Assembly (NCBI GenBank): GCA_004431415.1
Contig: QPMI01000519.1
Span: forward strand, 248,001 to 312,000
Direction: 5' to 3'
DNA from: Cyanophora paradoxa CCMP329
Lineage: Eukaryota > Plantae > Glaucophyta
DNA length: 64,000 nucleotides
Part shown: one piece after another, positions 49,016-64,000 of the stretch
Numbering within the stretch: position 1 is the stretch's first letter
Layout of the letters: each line of letters opens with the position of its first letter
Made by a program: the position numbers and the translations under genes
The notes under the pieces: model-generated
The model's input: only the letters and a program-made list of their open reading frames with translations
The model's database searches: none
Told to the model about the DNA's origin: nothing

Positions 49016-50679
49016 GGCCCGGCCTTGAGCTTGCAATTGTACAGACGCCCCCCCTGCCCATGGCCACTGCCAGCACATGTACAGTCGATTGATATATCGC
49101 CGCTCCAATTTTGCACTCGATTCCGATCGAAAGTTCTCCAATTTCGCATTCGATTTCGAATTAGCAATATCTCGCTCGCGAACGTGTATTCGTATTTTCG
49201 ATCGTATACGTAATATTAATATATATACTATCTCGCCCTATAGTTTCTTCTAAATGTTTCAATGTAGGAAGGCCCGCGCGCGCCGGCGCCGCGCCTAGGC
49301 CTGGCGCCGGCCGGCCGCCGGCCGAGCTCGAGCTCGCGATCGGAGAGTCGAGCTCGAGGGCCGGGCGCGCGCGCGCGCGCGGCGCGGGGGCGCCGCGCCG
49401 GCCGCGCGCGCGGCCGGCGCCGCGGCCGGTGCTGCAAGCCTGCAACTGGGCTGCCGGGTCGCAATTGCAATTGCAAGTTCCTCGCAACCCGCGGGCCGCG
49501 GCCGCGCACAGCACCGGTCAAATTGGCGGCGCCAGCCGACGCCTGCACGTACCCCCAAATAAACACATGGGTACCGTAGTACACTTGGGAACCAGCTGCT
49601 TGGCCCGCATGCTGAGCCAACGCCCGGCCGGCGCCGGCGCCGCGCGCCGGCCCCGCGCGCGGTTGCGCCGGGCCCCGAATTGCGAATTCGAAATTTAATT
49701 TTAACGGCTTGTTAATTTACAGAATTAAAAATGTTCATGGAAAGTGCTGCAATTTTAATTATATATTCCGAGCATACGTAATACGTAATGTTCAGCGACT
49801 GGGGTACATATTTGATTTCGTTCACGAGCACTTGCGCGCGCCGACGCCGGCGGCGCCGAGTCGGTTATATATCATAGTACATGCATATGTATATATTATT
49901 ATTAACTATTACATATATGTGTTTTTCACTTCGGCTTATATAGACTCGTAGCTACTAGGCTATAGGTTAACGTTGCAAATTGGCAATTGCAATCGCAAAT
50001 TAATTGCAGTACCATCCCGGAGGCCACGCGTGCACGGCCCCGGGAGCCTCGATCGGGAGTCGGGAAGCCGCCGGAGGCGCGCGCTCCTACCTGCATGGTG
50101 CGCATGCTAGGCTGGTAGCGCAGTGCGCATACGCGTACGAGTGTTGACGTCGCTGCTCAGCGGCTGGGCGTTCCGAAGTTCGACGCGTAGACTCATCGAT
50201 ATCGCCAACCCGGCATCAATTCGCCGACGCAGCAGCAGCGCAGGCTTTCAGCTCGTCGTGCGATTGCGCCCGGCGCGGCCTTGCAATTGGCGAGCAGCAG
50301 CTGTCTTGAGTTTCGGGGGACGCCCTGGAGGTCCGGATCTGGGATGGCGCGGCTTGCCCATCGTCCTTAGGGTGCGATCATTCCCAGTCAAGCATCAGCC
50401 GCAGTGCACCCGGCCCCTCGCCCGCAGTGCCCCGCGCCAGCCGCATGCGCAGGGCCCCGGGCCCCGCGGCCGCCACTTGGACGCATGCGCAAACATTGAT
50501 CGGCATACGGCCGCGGGAGGCGATGCATTAGCTTCTAGCCCTGTCTAGATCTTTGAAGGGGAGAAACAGCTCTAGACTCTGAGAGATTGACAGCGGCGAG
50601 CTGACTGCCGCACCCCGAATGCGCAGGTGCTCTTGACTGCAACTGCGGAGGCCTAGGTGAGCTGGACCGGGCCGCGGTG

Positions 50680-53600
50680 ATGGCAGCGGAGCAGCGAGCC
50701 AGCTCTTTTCGTCGCGCCTCGAGCTCGCCGGTGGCGAGCCTTACGCGTCGGCTTTCGCTCGGCCGCTCCGCGCCGCCCGAAGATGGGCCAGAGCGACGTG
50801 TTTCCTACATTTACACGCCGACACCCGAGCCCGCGGCGCCAGCCCCGGCGCCGGCTCGGCTGCAGGCTCTGAGTGGCCCGCCGGCGGCCGCACTCGAGTC
50901 GGATTCGATCAGGCGACGCGCCAGCATTGCGAGCGCGAGCCTGAGCAACCGCCCCGGCGCCCTCAGCACGGGCTTCGCGTCCGCCTTCGGCCCTGCCGCA
51001 GCGATGGCCAACGGTCCGACTGGCGGGAAGGCGTGGCCGCCGCAGCACGTGACAGCGTTTGACCTTGGGGACCCCGACGGAGGCACAGCCGAGGCCCCCG
51101 CGTACGGCGCCGAGGGCCATGACGACGCCGAGAGCGTTTCCGTGCCGGAGCCGCTCGCCAAGTTCGCGTCGCGTGCCGGTGCCGGCTGGTCCTGGCCAAG
51201 GTGACCCCTTGCGAGATTCAGGCCTCCCGGGGTCCGGTCCTATGCCTGGGCTGACGTCGACCCCCGCCCCGCCCCCTCAGGCCTCCCAGCGGCAGGGAAA
51301 GGCGCCCCGGTCCGCCTCCCCGGGCGGACCCCGCAGACTATATATATATATTCGAGCTCCTCACACTGCGCGCGCGCGCGACGCAGAGTCCTCGATAGCG
51401 CTGGATGCCGGGGTCGTCACCGACTCGCCACCCGACGTTGGCATACCGGGATCGCCCCCCGGACCCGACGTTTTGACATTCCGCAACTTCACGCCGGCGC
51501 TGAACGCCCCCGCGCGGGCCTCGCGGGACGGCCGCGATCGCAACCGGGACCCAGCGTCGGGGCCGGCGCGGCGCGCCTCGACCTCGCGCTCGGGGTCGGG
51601 GTCGCGCCGGAGGAAGGGGCGGGCGGGGCGGCGCTCGCTGCGGGACGGCCTGCGCCAGTGGTGGGCCGACGTGCCCCTCAAGCGCAAGCAGCTCTCCGTC
51701 GTCCTCTTCCTCCAGGCCCGCCCCGCCGCCCCCGCCGCCCCCGCCCCCCGCGAGCTCCCCCGCCCCCGCCCCTGAGCCCCAGGCCCGCAGGCGCTCGCGT
51801 TCTGCGCGATGGTCGCCGTCTTCGCGGCGGTCTTCACGACGGCGCACACCTCGCAGCTCGTCGAGCAGGCGCGCAGCGAGATCCTCATGAACGACATGGT
51901 CTACGGTGCGGCCGCGCCACCGGCGTCGCGGCCCCGCTCGCAGCGCGCCGGCTTGCACCCCCTTGGCCTCCCCGCTCGGCCCCTCACCGCGGTCGCGCAG
52001 ACATCAAAGTGAACCAGATGGGTTTCGGCTACGCCGGTGCGCCCCGCGCCGCCTCTCCGGCCCCCGCAAACACCCGTGTCGAATGCTGATCAAATACCGC
52101 TCTGCCTGTTGCCCCTCCGGACCGCAGGGCAAGCGGAAAACGCGGATATTGTTGAGGCGGCGCGGCGGGGCCCCGCAGACGAGAGCGCGGCGGCAGCAGA
52201 GGCGCGGGCGCGGGCGAAAGCAGCGCTGGTGAACGAGATCGTCCGGCGCGAGATCGAGTGCGTCGCCTCTCGCGTTTAAATATGCAGCGCGCGATATTTG
52301 CGAGAGGCGCTATGGTTTCATCAAATAACTAGGTTTGAATTTCGAGCTGGTCTGATCGTGGCACGCCGCCCGTGGCGCCGCGCAGCGTGTCGAGTCTGGT
52401 GACGGCCGACGCGAAGGCGCCCGTCGTCATCGTGAGCAGCTTCCGGGACAGGCGCGGCGAGGCCCTCGGGCCGCGGCTCGCCGCCCTCGTCGCGCGCGCC
52501 ATCCAGCACAACAAACAGGCGCGGCCCGGCCGACATTCGCAACTCTGCTGCGCTCTCGTCGCGAGCCTCGGGGGCGCGCGTGCGCAGGTGCGGGTGACGG
52601 CGCTGGTCTCGAAGGAGGAGCTGGCGGCCGAGGGGGCGCCCATCTCCGAGCGCTGCCCGCCCCACGCCCTCGTCCGGCCCGTCCACCCTCTAAATTCCTC
52701 CCCGCCGAATAAATTCCGACGCCCGCCGCGCCGCGCAGGATCATCGTTACGCCGGCAAGCAGCAGCCCGCGCCCGAAGGCGCGCGCCGCTCGGACATTGA
52801 CGACGGCACGCGCGCGCGCGCATGCGCAGGTCTACGCGAGCGGGGACAAGTTCAAGCCCGTCGGCGTCCTCGTCGCCGCCGACGTCGTGCGCCCCGCCGT
52901 CGACGGAACTCGCTCGAAGTGCGCGCCGCGCCGCGCCGGGTCCGAGCGGCTGCGCAGGTGAACGGCAAGGGCGCCATTGTGCAGACCGCGATGGCCGCAT
53001 TCAAGTCGGGCCACGTCGCCAGTGCGCCCGCAGCGCTTCCTGCGCTCGAGCTCCCGCGCTCTAGGTCTTTGGCGCGCGCCTCAATTTTGCGGCAGTCTAT
53101 CAGCTGCGGACGCCCGGCTGCCCTCTCAACGACTACAGCTGCTACAGCCTCACCGTCGCCATGGGAGGTGCGGCCGCGCCGTCGGCGATGGTCCCAGCGG
53201 CGTGCACGTGCACGTACACCACGCGATCGCGAGCAGCGTCGCGTGGAGCGCGTGGGCGGTGCTGACGGCGCGGCCCTCGTCCCCGCAGAGGGCGACTCGG
53301 TCTTCCAGAGCAGCTCCCCGATCGAGGAGGCGGCGAAGGGCGTCCTCGTCGCCGCCGCCCGCGCCCCCGTCGCCAGCAGCAAGTCGGCCGCTTTCTACGT
53401 GCGCAGCCGCGCCGCTCTCACGCACCGGTTGTTGGCGTCGACGCCTCACGCTGCGAGGAACGGGCGGGGCGCAGGAGGGGAGCAGCGTGGGGGCGACGGT
53501 GACGGGGGAGATCACGGCGCGGGGCCAGGACTACACGGTGGCCGCCAGCTGCATCCTCGACGAGGGCGACAACGTCGTCGCCTTCCAGGCGCGCACACAT

Positions 53601-56600
53601 CCCGCAGCTGCAGTCGACGGCGCCTCTGACCGCCGGCGGCGGCGGCGGGGCGCAGGTGCGGGGGATGTCGCAGGCGCGGGGCCACGAGTTCCTGCGCAAC
53701 GGCATCGTCGTGTGCGCCGCGACGGGCGTCGCCCTCTTCGCCCTCTCCGCGGCCCTCGCGCTCTGGCTCGGGGGCACCATCCTGGAGCCCCTGCGCGCCC
53801 TCTACGAGGCCGTCGAGGACTTCTGGAACGGTGACTCCGAGCCCCCGCCCCCGCTCCTCGAATTCGACCGCACGTATAGACGCGCTTCCTGCCGGCCTCG
53901 CTGCGGTCCGCTGATCGTCGGCGCCGGGGCCGTCGGGGCGGGGGCAGACGAGTCGTCGATCTCATCGCGGCAGACGATGGGGCGGGCGTTCAGCCTGCGG
54001 GCGCAGGGGCGGGACGAGATCGGGCGCCTCACGGGCGCCTTCGGGCGCATGGCCTCCCGCATCAGCGAGGCCCGCCCCGCCCCGCCCGACCCGAGCCGCC
54101 GCCTCCGCCTCCCCGCGCTGGCTGACCGTCGCGCCATCGCTGCCCGCCCCGCGACACGCGCAGGCGTACTCGCGGATGCACGAGTCGCGGGTGAAGGCGG
54201 CCAACGAAGAGTACCGCACGCGCCTCATCATCGAGACCTCCAACGACGGTGCGCCGCGCGCCGCGCCCCCTTCACATTTCCTCCTTTGGCTCCAGCCTTT
54301 GCCGCGTCGCTCGGCCCCGCGAGCCCTGCCGACTCGCTTCCCTATCGCAGCCGTCTTCGTGATCGGGACGGACTGCGTGGTGCGCTGCCCGCCCTCCCCC
54401 GCGCCCCGCTCGCCCCCCGCCCGCCCCCCTCGAGCCGAGCCAAACGCGCCCGTGCGCGGCGGCAGGTGATCTCCTGCAACCACAGCGCCGTCCAAATGTT
54501 CGGGTACACCTCCGACGAGGTGCACGCCCCCCGTCCGACTCGCTCGGCCAGCGCGCCCCGCTCTGAGCAGCGGGGCCCCCAGCTCGTCGGCCAGAACGTG
54601 AACAAGATCATGCCCCCGGAGATCGCCGCCCAGCACGACTCCTACGTCAAGAAGTGAGTCTCGGGCCTTTGATTTCATAGCTGTACTGTAACATCGACAT
54701 TAGCTATCTATCGCGCTGACTGGCCGGATCTCGCGCGCGCGCGCGCAGGCGGGTGACGAGCGGGCGGACGCTGCAGTCGCGGTTCGCGATCGTGCAGGGG
54801 CAGCGGCGCACGGGCGAGGTCTTCCCCCTCGAGCTCTCCATCAGGTGGGCCCCGCAAGGGGGCACGGGCGCGCCCCCGGCCCCCGCTCGAGCCGCCCTCA
54901 CGCGCCCCGCAGCGAGATGAAGATCGGGGACGAGCACCTCTTCGTCGGCATGCTCCGCGGTCCGCGCGCCCTCCCCCGCCCCTGCCCCGCCCCGCCCCGC
55001 CCCGCCCCGCCGCTGTTTTAGCCCGCAGCTCGCTCGTCGCACTCCTCTGGCGTCCGATTCTTCCGCCCGAGCATCGCGAGCGACGTCTGACCTCGCGCCC
55101 CCCCGGCAGACATCACGGAGCGGAAGGAGATGGAGCGGCAGCTCGAGCGGGAGCGCCAGCGCGCCGAGAACCTCCTCAAGAACATGCTGCCCCCCTCGGT
55201 GAGCGAGCGCCGGCGCCGACCTCTTCACCGCGGGCGCTCGCCGCGCTGACGGGCCGCCCCGGGCAGATCGCGGAGCGGCTGAAGGACATGGCGGAGAGGG
55301 AGGCGGCCAAGGCGATGCGCTCCCGCCGCCAGTCCAAGGCCTACGGGCCGGGCTCCCCCATGTGCGCCTCCTCCTCGCCGCCTCTCGTCCCGGGTTGGGG
55401 TGGGGGGAGGCTGCCCGTGCTGACCGGCGCGCGCGTGGGGCGGCAGCGTCGGGAACGCGGCGCTCAACTCGGACGACGAGCTGGAGCCCCTCCCGGGCGC
55501 CCCGGGGCCCTCCTCCCGCCCGGGCCTCCACCGGGGCAGCCTGGACTCGAGCTCGAGCGGGCTGGGGCCGCGGGGCAGCCTGCGGAACATCGACCGGCAG
55601 CTGCTGGAGGGCGCCCTCACCATCGCCGACCGCTGCGACAATGTACCCGTCCTCTTCGCCGACATCGTGCGGGCCGCCTTCCCTTTCCAACCCTGCTCGA
55701 GGCCCGCCGGCCGCCCCCCGCTGAGGGGCCGGGCGCGCCTCCAGGTGAACTTCACGCCCCTCGCGAGCTCGATGGCCCCGGAGCGCCTCGTCCAGCTCCT
55801 CAACAGTGCGCGCGCCCCTGGCTACAGGCGCCTCCCCCGGCGCGGCCCGCTGAGGGGCCGGCCCCGCCCAGCTATCTTCATGGAGTTCGACGGCCTGGTG
55901 GAGCGGTTCGGCCTGGAGAAGATCAAGACGATAGGAGGTGCGGGGGCGAGGGCGGGAGGGGCCCCGCCGCCGCCGCCGCCGCGCCTCGCCCCGACGCGGC
56001 GCTCACCGCGGGGCGCCCCCGCGGCAGACGCGGTGATGATCGCCGGGGGCGTGCCCCCGGAGCTCCCGGGGGCCTTCCAGGCGCCCGAGAGCCGCAACAG
56101 CTCGGGGTCGGCGCGGCGCATGAACCGCGCGCGCCTCGCCTCCGGCGAGAGCGACCTCATCGACGCGCGCGCCGAGCCGCCCATCGTCCGCATGGCGGTG
56201 CCCCCTCTCTGTCCTTCCCTCCCTTGCCTCTCGGCCGAGCGCGCGCGCCGCGCAGCGCCTGGCGATCGCGATGCAGGAGTCGATCGCGCGGTTCAAGGGC
56301 GCCGACGGGCAGTCCTTCCGCATCCGCATCGGCATGCACGTCGGCACCGTCATCGCCGGCGTCATCGGCAAGCGCAAGATCATGTACGACCTCTGGTGCG
56401 CGGCGCCGTCCCCCCGTACCCCCATCCCCTTCCGCCCCCCGGCGCTGCCCGGGTCTCATCGGCCGTCTTCGTAGGGGGGACACCGTCAACATAGCGTCGA
56501 GGTCCGGACCGGCCCCACGGCGCGTCCCTCGGCGCGCGGGGCGGGCACTGATGGGCGGGCGGGCCGGGGGTGCAGGATGGAGTCCTCGGGCGAGCCGGGC

Positions 56601-58984
56601 CGGACGCAGGTCTCCGAGGAGTGCTTCGCCATCCTCAAGGGCAAGTTCGCGTTCGAGGTGCGCCCGTACCCCCCGCCCCACTCGTCCCCCGCCCCGGTCG
56701 CCACCCCCCCGCGCCCCGCGCCGCGCGGCATGGCCCGACGGGGCGGCGGGGCGCAGGACCGGGGCACGATCTTCGTGAAGGGGAAGGGGGAGCTGCACAC
56801 GTACTTCCTGCTGAGCGCGCGGGGCCCCGGGGCCGCCAGCGATCGCCGCCTCCCGGACTTCTCCTCCGTCCTCCGCGCCCCCGAGGACCAGCACCCCATG
56901 CAGATCACCGTCCGCCGCGCCTCCGCCCTCACGGTACCCCCCCCCCCCCCCCCCCCGCCCTTCCCCTGATTGAGCCCCGCTAGGTTGGATCCGAGGCGGA
57001 AGAGGAGGAGAGGGGCAGGGATGCAGAGCGGGAGGGCAGCGTCATCCGGAGCCTCGAGTCGGTCCGCGGGCCCCCATGCCCAACTCGGCGTTCAGCCCCT
57101 TCTCGGAGCTCATCGATACCCTCCTCCACCCCGCAGATCGGCCCCGATCTCGAGGGCGTCGATTTCACGGTGTGGAGGTACCCCCCATCTGCTCTCCCCC
57201 AGCTCGTCCGGACCATGCTCGACCGCCTTGGGGTACGTGCACGCGCTCGCGCTTCCGATCTGATCCCGTACCCCCCTCACACCCGCTTTCGCCGCAGCTC
57301 ATCAGCGCATGCAAGATCAGGACGCAGGAGCTCAGCGCGTTCATAGAGATCGCCCTCTGCTCCTACAGCGAGAAGAACCCGTTCCACGTGCGAGGCCGAT
57401 CAAATCTGAGCGGGCCCCGCGCGGATTCGAACCCGGGCTCTCAGGACGCGTTCCACGCGGCGGACGTGATGCAGTTCGTGTACTGCTGCCTGACGACCGT
57501 CGTGCGGGGCCGGTGCGGCCTTTGCTCCGAGCTAAGCTGGTGGAGCTATAGCTAAGCGGGCGGGCCTCGCCCGGGGTGCAGGGGAAACCGGAGCCCGCGG
57601 AGCCCAGTGCTGATGGGCGCCCCCTCGAGCTCCTCGTCGGGGCCCTCGCCGTCGGCCCCCGGCTCGGCGCGGCGCTCGCAGCAGCCGGCGGCGGCCGTCC
57701 TCCGGGAGCTCGACCACGTCGACATGCTCGCCCTCCTCGTCGCCGCCCTCTGCCACGGTGCCCCCTCCCTCTCCCTTCCTTTTCCCTCCTTCTCCCTCCT
57801 CTCGCTGAGGGCGGGGTGTCTCAGACCTGGAGCACCCGGCGGTGTCGAACGCGTTCCTGGTGCGGACGCGGGCGCCGATGGCGCTGACGTACGCGAACTC
57901 GTCGCCGCTGGAGCGGCACCACGCCTTCCGCTGCCTGGCGCTGCTCGAGCGCAAGGACCTCGACATCGCCGCCGGCCTCCTCCCCGAGCAGCGCGCCCGC
58001 TTCACCCAGGCCCGCCCCCGCCCCCGGCCCCGCGCCCCGCCCCCTCCACCCCGCCCCTAACCCTCCAAGAGCCATTCGCAACTCTTGGCCCGCCCGCCCC
58101 GCGCCGCCTTGGCCTCGCTGACGTGTCGAGCGCCCGCAGCTGGTGCTGGACACGATCCTGGCGACGGACATGACCCTCCACGGCGAGTACATGACCGCCG
58201 TCCGCGCCCGCTTCGCCCCGGTGCGCCCCGAGCCACCCAGCGATCGCGAGCCTAGCCTCGGCTGGCCAGGGCACGCTCCCCAGAGCCCGCGCCCTCCATC
58301 CCCCTCCGCCTCGACTCGAGCCTAGTCTCGCTCGCCCTCCGCGCGGGCCGGCCCGGCGGGCCTGACGGGGGGGGGCAGGGGGAGGGCGGGCACGGGCACG
58401 GGGCGGCGGAGCCTGCGCGCTCCCGCTTCTCCCACCTCGACGACCGCACCCTCCTACTCGGCCTCCTAATCAAGGTACCCCACCCCCCCCCCCCCCCCCC
58501 GAACCGCCGCGGCTCAGCTTATCGTTCCCTTCCGCTTCCGCAGTGCGCCGACCTCGCGAACGGCTCTCGAGGCTTCGAAAACTCTCGCCACTGGGCCGAG
58601 CGCATCCAGCTCGAGTTCTTCGGTGCGCACGTACCCCCCGCCCTCGGATCCCCCCGCCCGATCCCCCGCGGCAGAGCAAGGGGCGCTGGAGGCGGAGCTG
58701 GGGCTTGACGTCACGCCGGGCTTCCTGGACAACGGCGAGCCGGAGCTGCTCAACGCCACCCGCCAGGTACCCCCACGCGAATGGCGGTACCCCCCCTTTC
58801 ATCTGACCCTTCTCCCCCGCAGGTGGGCTTCCTGTCGGCGGTGACGGTGCCGCTCTTCGAGACGCTGGCGGGCCTGGTGCCCGAGGTCGGGAGCGAGTTC
58901 GCCGCCAACGCGCGCGCCAACGTCGCCCGCTGGCGCGAGGCCGCCGACGCCCTCCGCTCCAAGTCCCTCCTCAAGCCCTCCTGA
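50680..58984 (+). CDS. Multidomain receptor: TM-extracellular sensor-TM-HAMP-PAS-adenylyl cyclase (class III)-cyclic nucleotide phosphodiesterase (class I)
   Basis: TM1 about 51690-51850. Sensor DIKVNQMGFGYA/GQAENA...VGVLVAADV/VNGK. TM2 about 53700-53780. HAMP EPLRAL...RDEIGRLTGAFGRM. PAS NHSAVQMFGYTSDE/LVGQNVNKIMP...GEVFPLELSI...FVGMLR/DITERK. Cyclase VLFADI/VNFT...EKIKTIG/DAVM...IRIGMHVG...YDLW/GDTVNIASR/MES...VKGKG. PDE NPFH/DAFHAADV...ALCH/DLEHPAVSN...LERHH...ILATDM...IK/CADLAN...EFF/EQG...Q/VGFL. TGA at 58982-58984. Confidence 0.93.
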
Positions 58985-60298: not shown

Positions 60299-63200
60299 AT
60301 GGCAGCCACGGCGCGAGAAGAGCCGCAGGGCAGTAGTAGCCCTGCGCTACAACCATCCGCGCCATCTGCGGCGAGCTCGGCGCTCATTCAGCGAGTAGAC
60401 TCCTTGCTCTCCACATTGGTGCCGAACAAGTGGACCGAATACAGCAGATTGCACGTGTTCAACTATGTCAAGTCGATCCTCGTTCGCGTCTTCCCAAACG
60501 TGACGGTGAGCTGCCTGGGTCGCTTTCGTATATGGAGCGCCAAGAGCGCCCGGGCGTGGCGGAGCTTCTGGACCAGTCGATAGGCCGAATCGCCCCGCGC
60601 GGGGCGGGCACGCTAGCCGCGCACCTTGCACGGTCCGCGCACAGGCCTTACGCGGTGCTGCAGGTCCTGCAGTTCGGCTCCGTGCCGCTGAAGACATATC
60701 TGCCTGACGGTGACATCGACGTTGGCTTCTTCGGCCTGCGCCTCGAGGAGGACTGGCCCCTCCGCCTCAAGAGCGCCATCGAGCGTGACGCGGCCAACCA
60801 GCAGAAGCTAGGCCATCCGCTGAAAGATGTAGCGTGCATCTTCGCCGAGGTGTGATTGTTGCCTCCGAGCACGCGGCCCCGGCGCTCCCATTCGCCGCTC
60901 ATGACGATCTCTCCGTTGCCTGAGCTCGCCCGCGCAGGTGAAGGTCGTGAAGTGCATCTTGGGCACGATCATGGTGGACATTAGCTCAAATCAAACGGCC
61001 GGTCTCTGCACTTTGTGCTTCTTCGAGGAGGCGAGCCCACCGTCTGCTGAATCTCGCCACTCGTGCTAACGGTGGCGCGCCGCTTTCCGCTTAGGTCGAC
61101 CGCCTGATTGACAAAGACCACCTGTTTAAGAGGAGCGTCATATTGATCAAGGCGTGGTGCTACTACGAGAGCAGGATACTTGGTTCGCAGATGGGTCTGA
61201 TTTCGACCTACGCGCTGGAGACACTCGTGCTTTACATTTTCAACCGGTTTAACGATTCTTTGCATTATCCTATCGATGTTCGTGCATCGCCCCTCACGTA
61301 GAGCCGCTTGCGGCGGGCAACCTCCGCGGTTGCCGATGCTCGTTTGAACGTGCAGGTCCTCTATCGTTTCTTGGAGGAATTCAGCCAGTTCGATTGGGAG
61401 AAGTACGCGATTTCTATATGGGGCCCGATCGAGATTGGAGCGCTGCGGAACCTGCCTCGTGCGCCGCACCCCACGCCCCTCGCATCTCTTTCCTTCCTTT
61501 TCTGACCGGCGCCCGGGGGCCCGCGCGGCGTCTCAGTGCCGGAGCGGGCGTCGTGGGAGGTTGCGGAAGGCAAGGAGCCGCCGATCACGTCCAAGTTCAT
61601 GACGTACATGCGGAGCATCTACACGGACTCGTTCGAGCGCCTCGGGGCCAACCGCCCGCACTACAAGCGACCGTCCGCGCCCCGCCCCGCCCCGCCCCGC
61701 CGCTCGCGCCGCCGCCGCCGCAGCGCTGACGCCGTGGCGCGCAGGGAGCAGCGGCAGTTCATGCTCAAGCACATGAACGTGGTGGACCCGCTCGTCCCCC
61801 ACAACAACCTCGGGCGCTCCGTATCCTTGTCCAACCTCGCGAGGATACGGAGTGCCCTCGGGCTGGGCCGGCAGCAGCTCGCCTCGGTCCTCGACAAGGC
61901 GGCCCCCGAGGCGGCCGCTGCCCTGGACCAGTTCTTCACGTCGACGCATCGTCGGCTCCGAGGGGACGTCTGGAGCCGCTCGGACCTTGCTGGGATCCAC
62001 CACCTGTGGAACTACGAGCGGTCCATGCTCTACTCGCTCGCGGTCACGGCCTCGGCCGCTCCCGCGCACGCCACCGCGACAGCCGCGGCGGCCGCAGCAG
62101 CAGCAGCGAACGCGCACATCGCTCGCATCCTGGCCGCCGCCTCTGCGGCGCACCTCCCCGCTCTTCTTCACCAACAGCAGGCCGCCGCAGCCGCCTACCT
62201 CCAGGCCTACGGGACTCTCCCCTCTTCCGCCTCCTCCGCCTCCTCCGCGTCCGCCGCCGCTGCCGTCCAGCCGGCCGCCCCCGCGCTCCCTTCCCCGTCC
62301 TCCCGGGGCGCGGCCGAGGCGGCGCGCGCGGCGGTCCTCTCTGCGATCGACGCGGCGGCGGCGGCGGCCTCGGGCGAAGGCGAGGCCTCGGGCAAGGGCG
62401 CTGGGGGCGAGCAGGCGCACCCGCCCGGCGCCGAGCACGCGCACTGGCACGGGCGCAACGGCGCCGTCAAGCCCCATCCGCAGCCGGCCTCCCCGCGGCC
62501 CGCCCGCGCCCTCCCGCGCCCCTGCCCCCTCCGGCCCCGGCTCCCCGGCGGCGCCTCCTCCTCCTCGGGCCGTCGCCCCGCCCCTGCCGGTCGTCCCCGC
62601 CCCGCCCACGGGCCCGCCCCCGCGCCCCCTCCGAGAGCTCTATCCCCGAAGAGCCGCCCATCCTCTTCGGCTCCGTGGACCCCGCCGAGCTCGCGAACGT
62701 CGTACCCCCTCCCTCCCGCCTCCCCGGCCTCCTCCTCCGCCTCCGGGCCTCCTCCGCTCGCCCCCGCCTGCGCCCGGCGCGCCGCGACCCCCCACCTCGC
62801 CCCGACGGCGGCCCCCGCCGCCCGCCCCAGCGCCGGCGCCGGCGGCGGCGCGAGGACCGGCACGTCGTCGCCGGCCTCGCGTGCCTCGGTCACCAGCCCG
62901 GGGCTGCAGGGGAGCTCTTCGGGGGAAGGGCCCCCCGAGGCGCGGCTGCCCCCCGCCGCCCAGCCGAGCGCCCCGTCCCTGTCCATCCACCTCCCCACGC
63001 CGCCTCACACCCCCGTCGTGCCCCTGCCCCGCTCCCCCGCCGCCTACCCCCACGGCTGGGAGGCCGATCCGCTCGCTGCCGCCGCCCGCCTCGCCATAAG
63101 GCACGCCCAGCAGCAGGCGGCGCAGCAGCAGCAGCAGCAGCCGGGGATCGTACCCCTGCAGCAGCCGCACCCCGTGCAGGCGGCGGCCTCCCAGATGCAG

Positions 63201-63889
63201 CAGGGGTACCTGGAGTACGGCCCCTCGGGGGCGGCGTCGCCCATGCCCCTGCCCTCGCCCTCGGCCTCGCCGGCCCCGCTCCCCGCGGCGCCCTCGCCGG
63301 TGCCGGCGCTGGCGCAGCAGCCCCTGGCGCCGCTCCTCTCGTCGATGCTGGAGAACATCCAGGGGCCCTTCACCTCGGCCTCGGGCGGCGCCGAGCGCGC
63401 CGACTACCTCGCCTCCGACCTCAAGGCCCGCCCTCTTCCCGCTCCGATCCGCGCCCCCCGCCGCGCCCCGCTCATCCTCCCTCGCTCGCGCGCGCGCAGG
63501 GGCTCCGCCAGAACGTCGAGCACCTGCAGACGATGTTCGCGCGGCGCGAGGGGCCCCCGACCTCCTCCCCCTCGGGCGGCGGCGGCGGCGGCGGGTACCG
63601 CCACGACCGGAGCATGACGCCCCCGCCCAGCGGCGCCCACGCTGGCTACGGAGGCGGCGGCGGCGGGGGGGGCGGCTACGGACGCGGGGGCGGCAACTAC
63701 TACAGCCCGCAGGGGCAGTACGCCCGCGGCGGGGGCGATCGCTGGGCCTCGCAGGGCGGCGGCTCGCGGGGCGGGCCCCGAGGAGGCCAGTGGGGCGACG
63801 GCGGCGACGCCCAGGGCGGCTACCGCAGGGTGCCGCCCCAGCAGATGCAGCAGCAGCAGCAACAACAACACCAGCAGCAACACCAGCAA

Positions 63890-63934
<45 letters not shown>

Positions 63935-64000
63935 CCGATGCCGCAACCGCTGCAGCCGATGCCCCAACCCGCCGATCAGCAGCAGCCACAGCAGCAACAG
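60299..64000 (+). CDS. Pol-beta-superfamily nucleotidyltransferase with PAP/OAS1 substrate-binding-like domain and long low-complexity tail; runs off the window
   Basis: FGSVPLKTYLPDGDIDV (hG[S]...DxD motif), AEVKVVKC...VDIS, HLFKRSVILIKAWCYYESRILG...GLISTYALETLVLYIF, VLYRFLEEFSQFDWEKY and NVVDPLVPHNNLGRSVS. These match the plant/algal PAP-OAS1-like NTase family. Confidence 0.93.
63838..64000 (+). repeat. CAG/CAA microsatellite encoding polyglutamine
   Basis: Long cagcagcag/caacaa run, in frame with the NTase tail. Confidence 0.9.

What the first reader, a model, noticed from the sequence alone, without database searches (positions are those of the whole stretch)
51650..54070. Input module looks like a cyanobacterial chemoreceptor (MCP) periplasmic domain rewired onto a eukaryotic cyclase
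Seen in sequence: WWADVPLKRKQL-TM1...QLVEQARSEILMNDMVY/DIKVNQMGFGYA/GQAENADIVEAA...LVNEIVRREIE...ALVR/IIVTP/VY...VGVLVAADV/VNGKGAIVQTAMAAF...YTVAASCILD...VRG-TM2-HAMP. From memory, not a search, these blocks match in order the N-terminal region of a family of cyanobacterial methyl-accepting chemotaxis/pilus receptors (WFYNLPI.RKQL...QAKSEL...YNIKINQMGFGFRGQSDN...NEI..R.IEYATLV...ALIRYTVTPV...GALVSGDIVNGK). The domain is now split by many spliceosomal introns, including a 16-nt exon at 52739-52754, so it is long-resident in the nucleus and not contamination. Inference: an endosymbiotic or horizontal transfer in which the MCP output was replaced by PAS-AC-PDE.
Basis: partly seen in the sequence, partly recalled or inferred. 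Interest (0 to 1): 0.85.

Follow-up and report, generated by a model that had tools for sequence, protein, structure and literature searches.

The report
Cyanobacterial-type sensor on algal cAMP enzyme
An intron-rich nuclear gene of the alga Cyanophora encodes a membrane receptor whose outside sensing part is otherwise typical of cyanobacterial movement receptors and whose inside both makes and destroys cAMP; a plastid-less euglenid uses the same sensor on a cyclase, so how it reached eukaryotes is still open.

Summary
The window is Cyanophora paradoxa, gene tig00020960_g16603 (library protein P0001, 1499 aa, 43 exons). Eleven sensor-region exons match, in order, a cyanobacterial receptor family. 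The match runs from TM1 to HAMP (31% identity, E 4e-46). The extracytoplasmic part folds as a double-Cache domain (pLDDT 91). Behind it lie a FixL-like PAS, an adenylyl cyclase and a class I PDE, all with catalytic residues in place. Introns, GC3 of 0.94 and a paralogue show long residence.

(1) In cyanobacteria the sensor sits on chemoreceptors (57) but also on histidine kinases (14).
(2) The cyclase is not demonstrably eukaryotic. Its best single-domain matches outside Cyanophora are cyanobacterial-type, and the tree is unresolved.
(3) The plastid-less euglenid Entosiphon carries the same sensor twice, each on HAMP-cyclase. Its copies group with Cyanophora's on long branches, not inside cyanobacteria.

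Endosymbiotic transfer is therefore possible but not shown. Most likely this is a ligand-gated membrane cAMP pulse generator whose ligand is unknown. I found no description in the literature searched. Verdict: new variant of a known kind.

The parts
51004..58984 (+). whole gene, Cyanophora paradoxa tig00020960_g16603, 43 coding exons, 1499 aa (library protein P0001); the start is uncertain (in-frame ATG also at 50680)
51004..51658 (+). low-complexity cytoplasmic N-terminus (aa 1-165), ending in an Arg/Lys-rich stretch before TM1; no cyanobacterial counterpart
51659..51715 (+). end of exon e1: conserved pre-TM1 motif and start of TM1 (profile positions 2-18)
51791..51905 (+). exon e2: rest of TM1 (TM1 about aa 176-205) and start of the long Cache stalk helix
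52001..52036 (+). exon e3: family signature motif at the end of the stalk helix
52128..52257 (+). exon e4: helices 2-3 of the double-Cache domain
52386..52518 (+). exon e5: membrane-distal module, first strands and helix
52588..52676 (+). exon e6: membrane-distal module
52739..52754 (+). 16-nt micro-exon e7, part of a distal-module strand
52830..52886 (+). exon e8: last distal strand with invariant Asp376
52958..53021 (+). exon e9: start of the membrane-proximal module
53096..53167 (+). exon e10: proximal module with a Cys pair shared with the paralogue and absent from cyanobacteria
53289..53398 (+). exon e11: poorly conserved, low-confidence loop and helix of the proximal module
53475..53588 (+). 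exon e12 (corrected start): last strands of the proximal module
53656..53830 (+). exon e13: VRG motif, TM2 (about aa 509-541) and first HAMP helix
53948..54069 (+). exon e14: second HAMP helix
54215..55120 (+). FixL-like PAS domain (aa 614-727, spliced); proximal His670 kept, distal Arg position is Ala
55124..55281 (+). signalling-helix coiled coil (aa 729-758, spliced)
55628..56813 (+). class III adenylyl cyclase (aa 846-1059, spliced): D857, D901, K897, D1002, N1009, R1013 present
57137..58888 (+). class I cyclic-nucleotide phosphodiesterase (about aa 1126-1468, spliced): H1187, H1191, H1268, D1269, D1392, Q1446 present

Best explanation
P0001 is a two-pass membrane receptor enzyme that works as a homodimer. 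Shown: the architecture (cytoplasmic N-terminus, TM1, extracytoplasmic double-Cache domain, TM2, HAMP, FixL-like PAS, coiled coil, adenylyl cyclase, class I PDE), intact catalytic motifs, and homology of TM1-through-HAMP to a cyanobacterial receptor family. Inferred from how Cache-HAMP receptors and class III cyclases work: a small molecule outside the cell binds a Cache pocket; the signal passes through TM2 and HAMP, is modulated by the probably haem-binding PAS, and sets the cyclase dimer on or off; the attached PDE destroys the cAMP, giving a short local pulse at the plasma or flagellar membrane, plausibly steering swimming. The gene is a mosaic. The input module came from a cyanobacterial-type gene (MCP, kinase or an unsampled cyclase). 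In the glaucophyte line it was combined with a PAS-cyclase-PDE cassette that Cyanophora also uses with another N-terminus. The Entosiphon copies probably share a source with the Cyanophora ones. The route (plastid-derived, ordinary HGT, or eukaryote-to-eukaryote) is not resolved.
For: Collinear exon matches. 31% identity over 444 aa including both TMs and HAMP. Family almost confined to cyanobacteria: 113 of 120 motif loci are so labelled; five are 'uncultured bacterium', three of which I placed in the tree, all among cyanobacteria; one is 80-82% identical to cyanobacterial kinases at 41% GC; one is a chance match. Double-Cache fold for the Cyanophora and Entosiphon copies. Basic stretch before TM1; Cys gained in all four eukaryotic copies while 102 of 106 cyanobacterial domains have none. 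Catalytic residues present. Full paralogue P0012, and cassette paralogue P0122 without this sensor. Four columns where all four eukaryotic copies share a residue rare in cyanobacteria, against a control mean of 0.1 and a maximum of 3-4 in 1770 pairs. The eukaryotic copies form one side of a branch, 98/89.
Against: No ligand, activity, localisation or transcript was tested here. The amino-acid-binding motif is absent, and several residues near-invariant in cyanobacteria are changed in the eukaryotic copies (R235A, K325R, Y280V), so ligand binding may have changed or been lost. The eukaryotic branches are long and compositionally biased, and they attach to whichever cyanobacterial branch is longest (L005, then L018), so their grouping may be partly artefact. 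There is no outgroup. Homologue searches were word-limited and returned only a sample of the family. The Entosiphon sequence is from a transcriptome and could belong to a co-cultured eukaryote.
Confidence: 0.7

Rival explanations
1. Origin A: endosymbiotic transfer of an MCP gene from the plastid ancestor, with the MCP tip replaced by host PAS-AC-PDE in glaucophytes. Entosiphon got its copy separately (eaten cyanobacteria or algae) or the transcript is a contaminant.
For: The host has a primary plastid (PMC6704402). MCPs are the commonest carriers (57 of 82 classified). P0001 is closer in raw identity to cyanobacteria (mean 31%) than to Entosiphon (25-26%). The long branch fits great age.
Against: No nesting inside cyanobacteria. 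No red or green algal copy turned up (limited sensitivity). Shared rare residues with Entosiphon. The cyclase looks no more eukaryotic than bacterial.
Confidence: 0.3
2. Origin B: a ready-made sensor-HAMP-cyclase gene from a cyanobacterial-type donor entered eukaryotes once and was passed on, or entered twice from one donor subfamily. Cyanophora later added PAS and PDE; Entosiphon duplicated the unit in tandem. No MCP output was ever replaced in a eukaryote.
For: Both eukaryotes couple the sensor to HAMP and a class III cyclase. Cyanobacteria have Cache-HAMP-PAS-cyclases with other Cache families. The AU test does not reject Cyanophora+Entosiphon cyclases as one clade (p 0.385) or Cyanophora+cyanobacteria (p 0.437).
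Against: None of about 180 sampled bacterial family members carries a cyclase (37 loci were cut before the output). A metagenome scan for the eukaryote-type motif variant found only a chance match. The two eukaryotes' cyclases do not group in any free tree.
Confidence: 0.4
3. Origin C: the sensor-cyclase is ancient in eukaryotes (before the Archaeplastida-Discoba split) and was lost or has diverged beyond detection in most lineages.
For: Present in two very distant eukaryotic groups, with grouped copies. A Cache-domain adenylate cyclase is reported in Naegleria (PMC4822843; its Cache family was not checked here).
Against: Needs very many losses. Only two eukaryotes were found. The bacterial family is confined to one phylum.
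Confidence: 0.12
4. Function rival: the Cache domain no longer binds a ligand and serves as a membrane anchor and dimerisation scaffold; the enzyme is set by the PAS (gas or redox) alone.
For: Substitutions at positions near-invariant in cyanobacteria. The PAS is FixL-like with the proximal His. Paralogue P0122 has two PAS and the same output without this sensor.
Against: The full 300-aa fold, the signature motif, R276, R353 and D376 are kept in all four eukaryotic copies. P0001 has Ala at the FixL distal-Arg position, which from my own knowledge weakens O2 switching.
Confidence: 0.15

Closest known systems
Cyanobacterial type IV pilus chemoreceptors (annotated PixJ/PilJ-like; patA-cheY-cheW-mcp operons) and His kinases with the same input module
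   Same: TM1-dCache-TM2-HAMP homologous over 444 aa, 31% identity; same signature motif and fold.
   Different: No MCP signalling domain and no GAFs; the output is PAS-AC-PDE; split by 12 introns between the pre-TM1 motif and TM2; gained Cys; several conserved residues changed. I found no paper giving a ligand for this cyanobacterial domain.
Bacterial Cache-HAMP-(PAS)-adenylate cyclases (e.g. cyanobacterial proteins P0130-P0133; table in PMC4822843)
   Same: Same overall logic and domain order; cyclase 47-51% identical.
   Different: Their Cache is dCache_1-type and does not match this sensor profile (only the TM2-HAMP end does); their PAS is only about 27-31% identical; they have no PDE.
CAPE (combined AC with PDE) of streptophytes with motile sperm (PMC8115329, PMC5159850, PMC11032487)
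   Same: One membrane protein with a class III AC and a class I PDE; linked to flagellar motility.
   Different: CAPE has the PDE at the N-terminus, the AC at the C-terminus and TMs between them. No Cache, HAMP or PAS is described. The order here is reversed, which points to an independent fusion (inference).
Eukaryotic Cache proteins: alpha2delta/CACHD1 dCache_1AA (PMC8915833); Naegleria Cache-adenylate cyclase (PMC4822843)
   Same: Cache domains of bacterial origin used as extracellular modules in eukaryotes; the Naegleria case also drives a cyclase.
   Different: No VWA insertion and no amino-acid motif here; weak dCache_3-type rather than dCache_1 family match; the cyanobacterial link and the AC-PDE output are not described for those.
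Rhizobial FixL haem-PAS
   Same: Best solved-structure match of the PAS (E 3e-23), proximal His aligned.
   Different: Drives a cyclase, not a kinase; the distal-Arg position is Ala in P0001 but Arg in P0012 and P0122.

Membership tests
Cyanobacterial receptor input module (TM1-dCache-TM2-HAMP family of L001-L120) | Significant sequence homology over the whole module, blocks in order | tested here: met
   235 bits against the cyanobacterial profile
Cyanobacterial receptor input module (TM1-dCache-TM2-HAMP family of L001-L120) | Phylogenetic nesting inside cyanobacterial sequences | tested here: inconclusive
   The eukaryotic copies form a long separate branch whose attachment shifts with the longest cyanobacterial row; no outgroup
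Methyl-accepting chemotaxis protein | MCPsignal domain | tested here: not met
   Pfam and NCBIfam scans of P0001
Double-Cache superfamily | Long N-terminal helix plus two PAS-like modules between two TMs | tested here: met
   AlphaFold pLDDT 90.6; top Foldseek hits TlpA, LuxQ, DctB, Tlp3; same for Entosiphon
Pfam dCache_3 | Score above the curated cut-off | tested here: inconclusive
   43 of 64 alignment members match at E up to 0.1 (best 1.7e-10), often below the cut-off; P0001 itself has no hit
dCache_1AA amino-acid sensors | YxxxxRxWY...Y...D motif (PMC8915833) | tested here: not met
   No RxWY in the alignment; a terminal Asp (D376) is conserved, and its equivalence to the motif's Asp is my inference
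Class III adenylyl cyclase | Two metal Asp, adenine-specifying Lys and Asp, catalytic Asn and Arg | tested here: met
   D857, D901, K897, D1002, N1009, R1013; residue roles from established knowledge
Class III adenylyl cyclase | Measured ATP to cAMP activity | not testable with these tools
   needs an assay
Eukaryotic membrane cyclases (tmAC C1/C2 type) | Two cyclase domains with two 6-TM blocks; grouping with C1 or C2 clades | tested here: not met
   Single domain, two TMs; Cyanophora cyclases form their own clade. Sampling lacked green-algal cyclases, so a eukaryotic origin is not excluded.
Class I cyclic-nucleotide PDE | PDEase_I domain with metal ligands and invariant Gln | tested here: met
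   Pfam 191 bits; aligned with PDE9 and PDE4; one deviation, Asp1188 where Asn is usual
FixL-type haem-PAS | Proximal His | tested here: met
   H670 aligned with the FixL His
FixL-type haem-PAS | Distal Arg for O2 switching | tested here: not met
   Ala at that column; role of the Arg from my own knowledge
CAPE | N-terminal PDE, central TMs, C-terminal AC | tested here: not met
   Order reversed
Endosymbiotically transferred gene | Shared with other Archaeplastida and nested in cyanobacteria | tested here: inconclusive
   No other archaeplastid found, with limited sensitivity; g16603 not found in the stored, truncated supplements of the genome paper

The most novel reading that the evidence does not exclude
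An undescribed family of eukaryotic chemoreceptor-cyclases: a cyanobacterial pilus-receptor ligand domain was captured once, moved between distant flagellates (glaucophyte and euglenid), and now steers cAMP-dependent swimming in response to the same chemical cue that guides cyanobacterial motility. In Cyanophora it has a built-in gas-sensing gate and a built-in off switch.
Probability: 0.3. Interest if true: 0.82.

Novelty: new variant of a known kind. Interest (0 to 1): 0.62.

Why it matters
Chemosensory receptors of free-living algae and flagellates are largely unknown (my own knowledge). This gene gives a concrete, soluble 300-aa candidate ligand domain wired straight to cAMP synthesis and breakdown. 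One ligand screen would address both the algal receptor and a widespread cyanobacterial receptor family for which I found no published ligand. It is also a test case for whether signalling modules, not just metabolic genes, passed from cyanobacteria to eukaryotes. The Entosiphon copy warns that 'cyanobacterial domain in an alga' does not by itself mean plastid origin.

Tried and rejected
Contamination: rejected on 42 introns, GC3 of 0.94 as in the rest of the gene, and paralogues.

Searches that gave nothing useful:
- Pfam on single sensor exons found only HAMP.
- tblastn of the sensor (exon e2, P0001 and P0013 pieces) against plasmids found nothing, so no outgroup was obtained.
- The PDB sequence search with the family profile gave two irrelevant weak hits.
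- P0002 (Acinetobacter repeat protein) is a chance hit.
- L102 and L124 are chance motif matches without the family context. L015, labelled Acetobacteraceae, is most likely a mis-binned cyanobacterial contig.
- No contig record exists for P0001.

ranks eukaryotic two-domain cyclases first only because two domains are summed; I used single-domain scores instead. The mixture-model 'careful' cyclase trees did not finish; quick trees and one finished LG+G4 tree disagree on deep placement. My first control for shared residues was badly designed and was replaced. Ten literature searches found no description of this gene or family in eukaryotes; most subscription journals are not covered.


Full report
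Method note. One reference (window 52387-52674) is a plain genomic open frame holding two exons and the in-frame intron between them. Searching with it returned the library's own annotated protein for this gene (P0001). All whole-protein work used that id. No contig that I took for human came up.

Observation. The region is GC-rich (about 71%) with short introns. Fifteen exons from 51387 to 54248 are open, phase-compatible and bounded by GT-AG or GC-AG; five of the twelve introns inside the TM1-TM2 module are GC-AG. All fifteen peptides occur exactly in P0001, which is EukProt Cyanophora paradoxa tig00020960_g16603.t1. The library model has 43 exons from 51004 to 58984 and extends exon e12 back to 53475. 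Pfam gives HAMP 534-595, PAS 614-727, a coiled coil 729-758, a class III cyclase 846-1059 and PDEase_I 1186-1468. Hydrophobic stretches lie at about 176-205 and 509-541.

The sensor family. Of the loci, 113 are labelled cyanobacterial and five 'uncultured bacterium'; the three of those placed in the tree fall among cyanobacteria. One (L015) is 80-82% identical to cyanobacterial kinases at 41% GC, and one (L102) is a chance match. A profile from 99 of these proteins matches the other exons in order and picks them out of the six-frame translation of the whole window. P0001 aligns with a Thermocoleostomius MCP at 31% over 444 aa, from the pre-TM1 motif through HAMP (E 4e-46). Carriers are 57 MCPs, 14 histidine kinases, 11 other or short proteins and 37 cut by the locus edge; none is a cyclase. 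Of the MCP loci with room upstream, 26 of 39 have cheW in front, and none of 12 kinase loci does. The module is therefore mobile within cyanobacteria; it also occurs on TPR proteins and on a kinase in an IMG/VR viral contig. A second search gave 60 more members, all named ones cyanobacterial.

Fold. AlphaFold on P0001 aa 204-508 gave pLDDT 90.6, with a long first helix and two alpha/beta modules. The top Foldseek matches are double-Cache domains such as TlpA, LuxQ, DctB and Tlp3 (TM 0.4-0.5, 8-15% identity). Of 64 alignment members, 43 match dCache_3 weakly. The amino-acid-binding motif of PMC8915833 is absent. The ligand cannot be predicted from these data. R276, R353 and D376 are kept in all eukaryotic copies and are candidates for mutagenesis.

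Residence. Sensor exons have GC3 of 0.94, like the PDE exons (0.95). A paralogue, g12721 (P0012), has the same architecture at 43% identity. Its neighbour g12720 (P0094) starts at HAMP. g22247 (P0122) has two PAS, cyclase and PDE behind a different N-terminus. So a PAS-cyclase-PDE cassette exists in Cyanophora with and without this sensor.

The output is a mosaic. The PAS is closest to FixL among solved structures (E 3e-23) and keeps the proximal His, but has Ala at the distal-Arg column; plasmid hits are alphaproteobacterial at about 38-43%. The cyclase has all six canonical catalytic and adenine-specifying residues. By single-domain score its best matches outside Cyanophora are cyanobacterial-type Cache-HAMP-PAS-cyclases at 47-51%, which carry a different Cache family. 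Betaproteobacterial cyclases follow at about 45%. In trees the Cyanophora cyclases form their own clade, placed with cyanobacteria and Burkholderiaceae in one quick tree (SH-aLRT 90) and unresolved in others. AU tests reject neither Cyanophora+cyanobacteria (p 0.437) nor Cyanophora+Entosiphon (p 0.385). 'Eukaryotic cyclase' is thus unsupported, though not excluded: no green-algal cyclases were in the set, and long or unidentified rows were left out of the smaller tree. The PDE aligns with PDE9 and PDE4 with metal ligands and the invariant Gln in place.

A second eukaryote. Screening the cyclase hits with the sensor profile revealed P0110/P0209 from Entosiphon sulcatum, a colourless euglenid (phagotrophic and primarily plastid-less from my own knowledge). 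P0209 is a tandem of two TM-sensor-TM-HAMP-cyclase units, scoring 204 and 165 bits, without PAS or PDE. Its first sensor also folds as a double Cache. The tandem design, the low-complexity linker, four to five N-glycosylation sequons and Cys pairs per domain fit a eukaryotic secretory-pathway protein, but a co-cultured eukaryote cannot be excluded. In the sensor tree the four eukaryotic copies form one side of a branch (98/89). They share four residues rare in cyanobacteria, against a control mean of 0.1 and a maximum of 3-4. The branches are long and attach beside whichever cyanobacterial row is longest, so neither nesting nor a donor lineage is shown. A metagenome scan for the eukaryote-type motif variant found no real locus, which argues against an abundant unsampled donor carrying that variant.

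Mechanism. Shown: parts, order, fold, catalytic motifs. Inferred: N-in/C-in topology from the basic stretch before TM1 and the homology; an extracytoplasmic oxidising location from Cys gained in all eukaryotic copies; no glaucophyte-type transit peptide by inspection; ligand binding relayed through TM2-HAMP-PAS-coiled coil to a homodimeric cyclase; PDE shaping a local cAMP pulse. A role in swimming is by analogy with CAPE, which controls sperm motility in Marchantia (PMC11032487, abstract).

Comparison and novelty. Cache-HAMP-cyclases are known in bacteria, and a Cache-cyclase is reported in Naegleria (PMC4822843). AC-PDE fusions are known as CAPE, in the opposite order. The Cyanophora genome paper does not mention cyclases, and the stored parts of its supplements do not list this gene. 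I found no description of this sensor family in eukaryotes or of this domain combination. It works like a bacterial receptor cyclase with an added off switch; it is not an MCP and not a CAPE.

Verdict. Real and interesting. New variant of a known kind, interest 0.62.

Noticed in passing
P0110 / P0209 (Entosiphon sulcatum, EukProt): Tandem two-unit receptor cyclase with the same cyanobacterial-type sensor in a plastid-less euglenid; worth its own study.
   Followed up: partly
window 50677-51204 and 51339-51351: An in-frame ATG at 50680 would add 108 aa to the library model, and a TA-repeat run lies in the intron before exon e1; the true 5' end of the gene is uncertain.
   Followed up: no
window 51716-54163: High share of GC-AG introns (6 of the 14 checked between e1 and e15).
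   Followed up: partly
P0094 (tig00000178_g12720): Neighbour and close duplicate of P0012 whose model starts at HAMP; it may have unannotated sensor exons.
   Followed up: no
P0122 (tig00021534_g22247): Two FixL-like PAS domains plus cyclase and PDE; a candidate O2-regulated cAMP enzyme in a glaucophyte, distal Arg kept.
   Followed up: partly
window 57387-57447: PDE motif reads FHD where YHN/FHN is usual; the change sits at an exon junction.
   Followed up: no
window 60300-64000: Downstream gene with a nucleotidyltransferase-like GS...DxD stretch near 60700-60760; two short pieces gave no Pfam hit.
   Followed up: partly
L015: Contig in a MAG labelled Acetobacteraceae encodes a kinase 80-82% identical to cyanobacterial ones at 41% GC: likely mis-binned.
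   Followed up: yes
L132:2824-5103: A histidine kinase with this sensor lies in a 79-kb IMG/VR viral contig, next to replication-initiator-like genes and a transposase-like ORF.
   Followed up: partly
L121:4690-6315, L122:5018-6655: Divergent sensor-HAMP-TPR proteins with no enzymatic output, next to a DUF8082 gene, on cyanobacteria-like contigs.
   Followed up: partly
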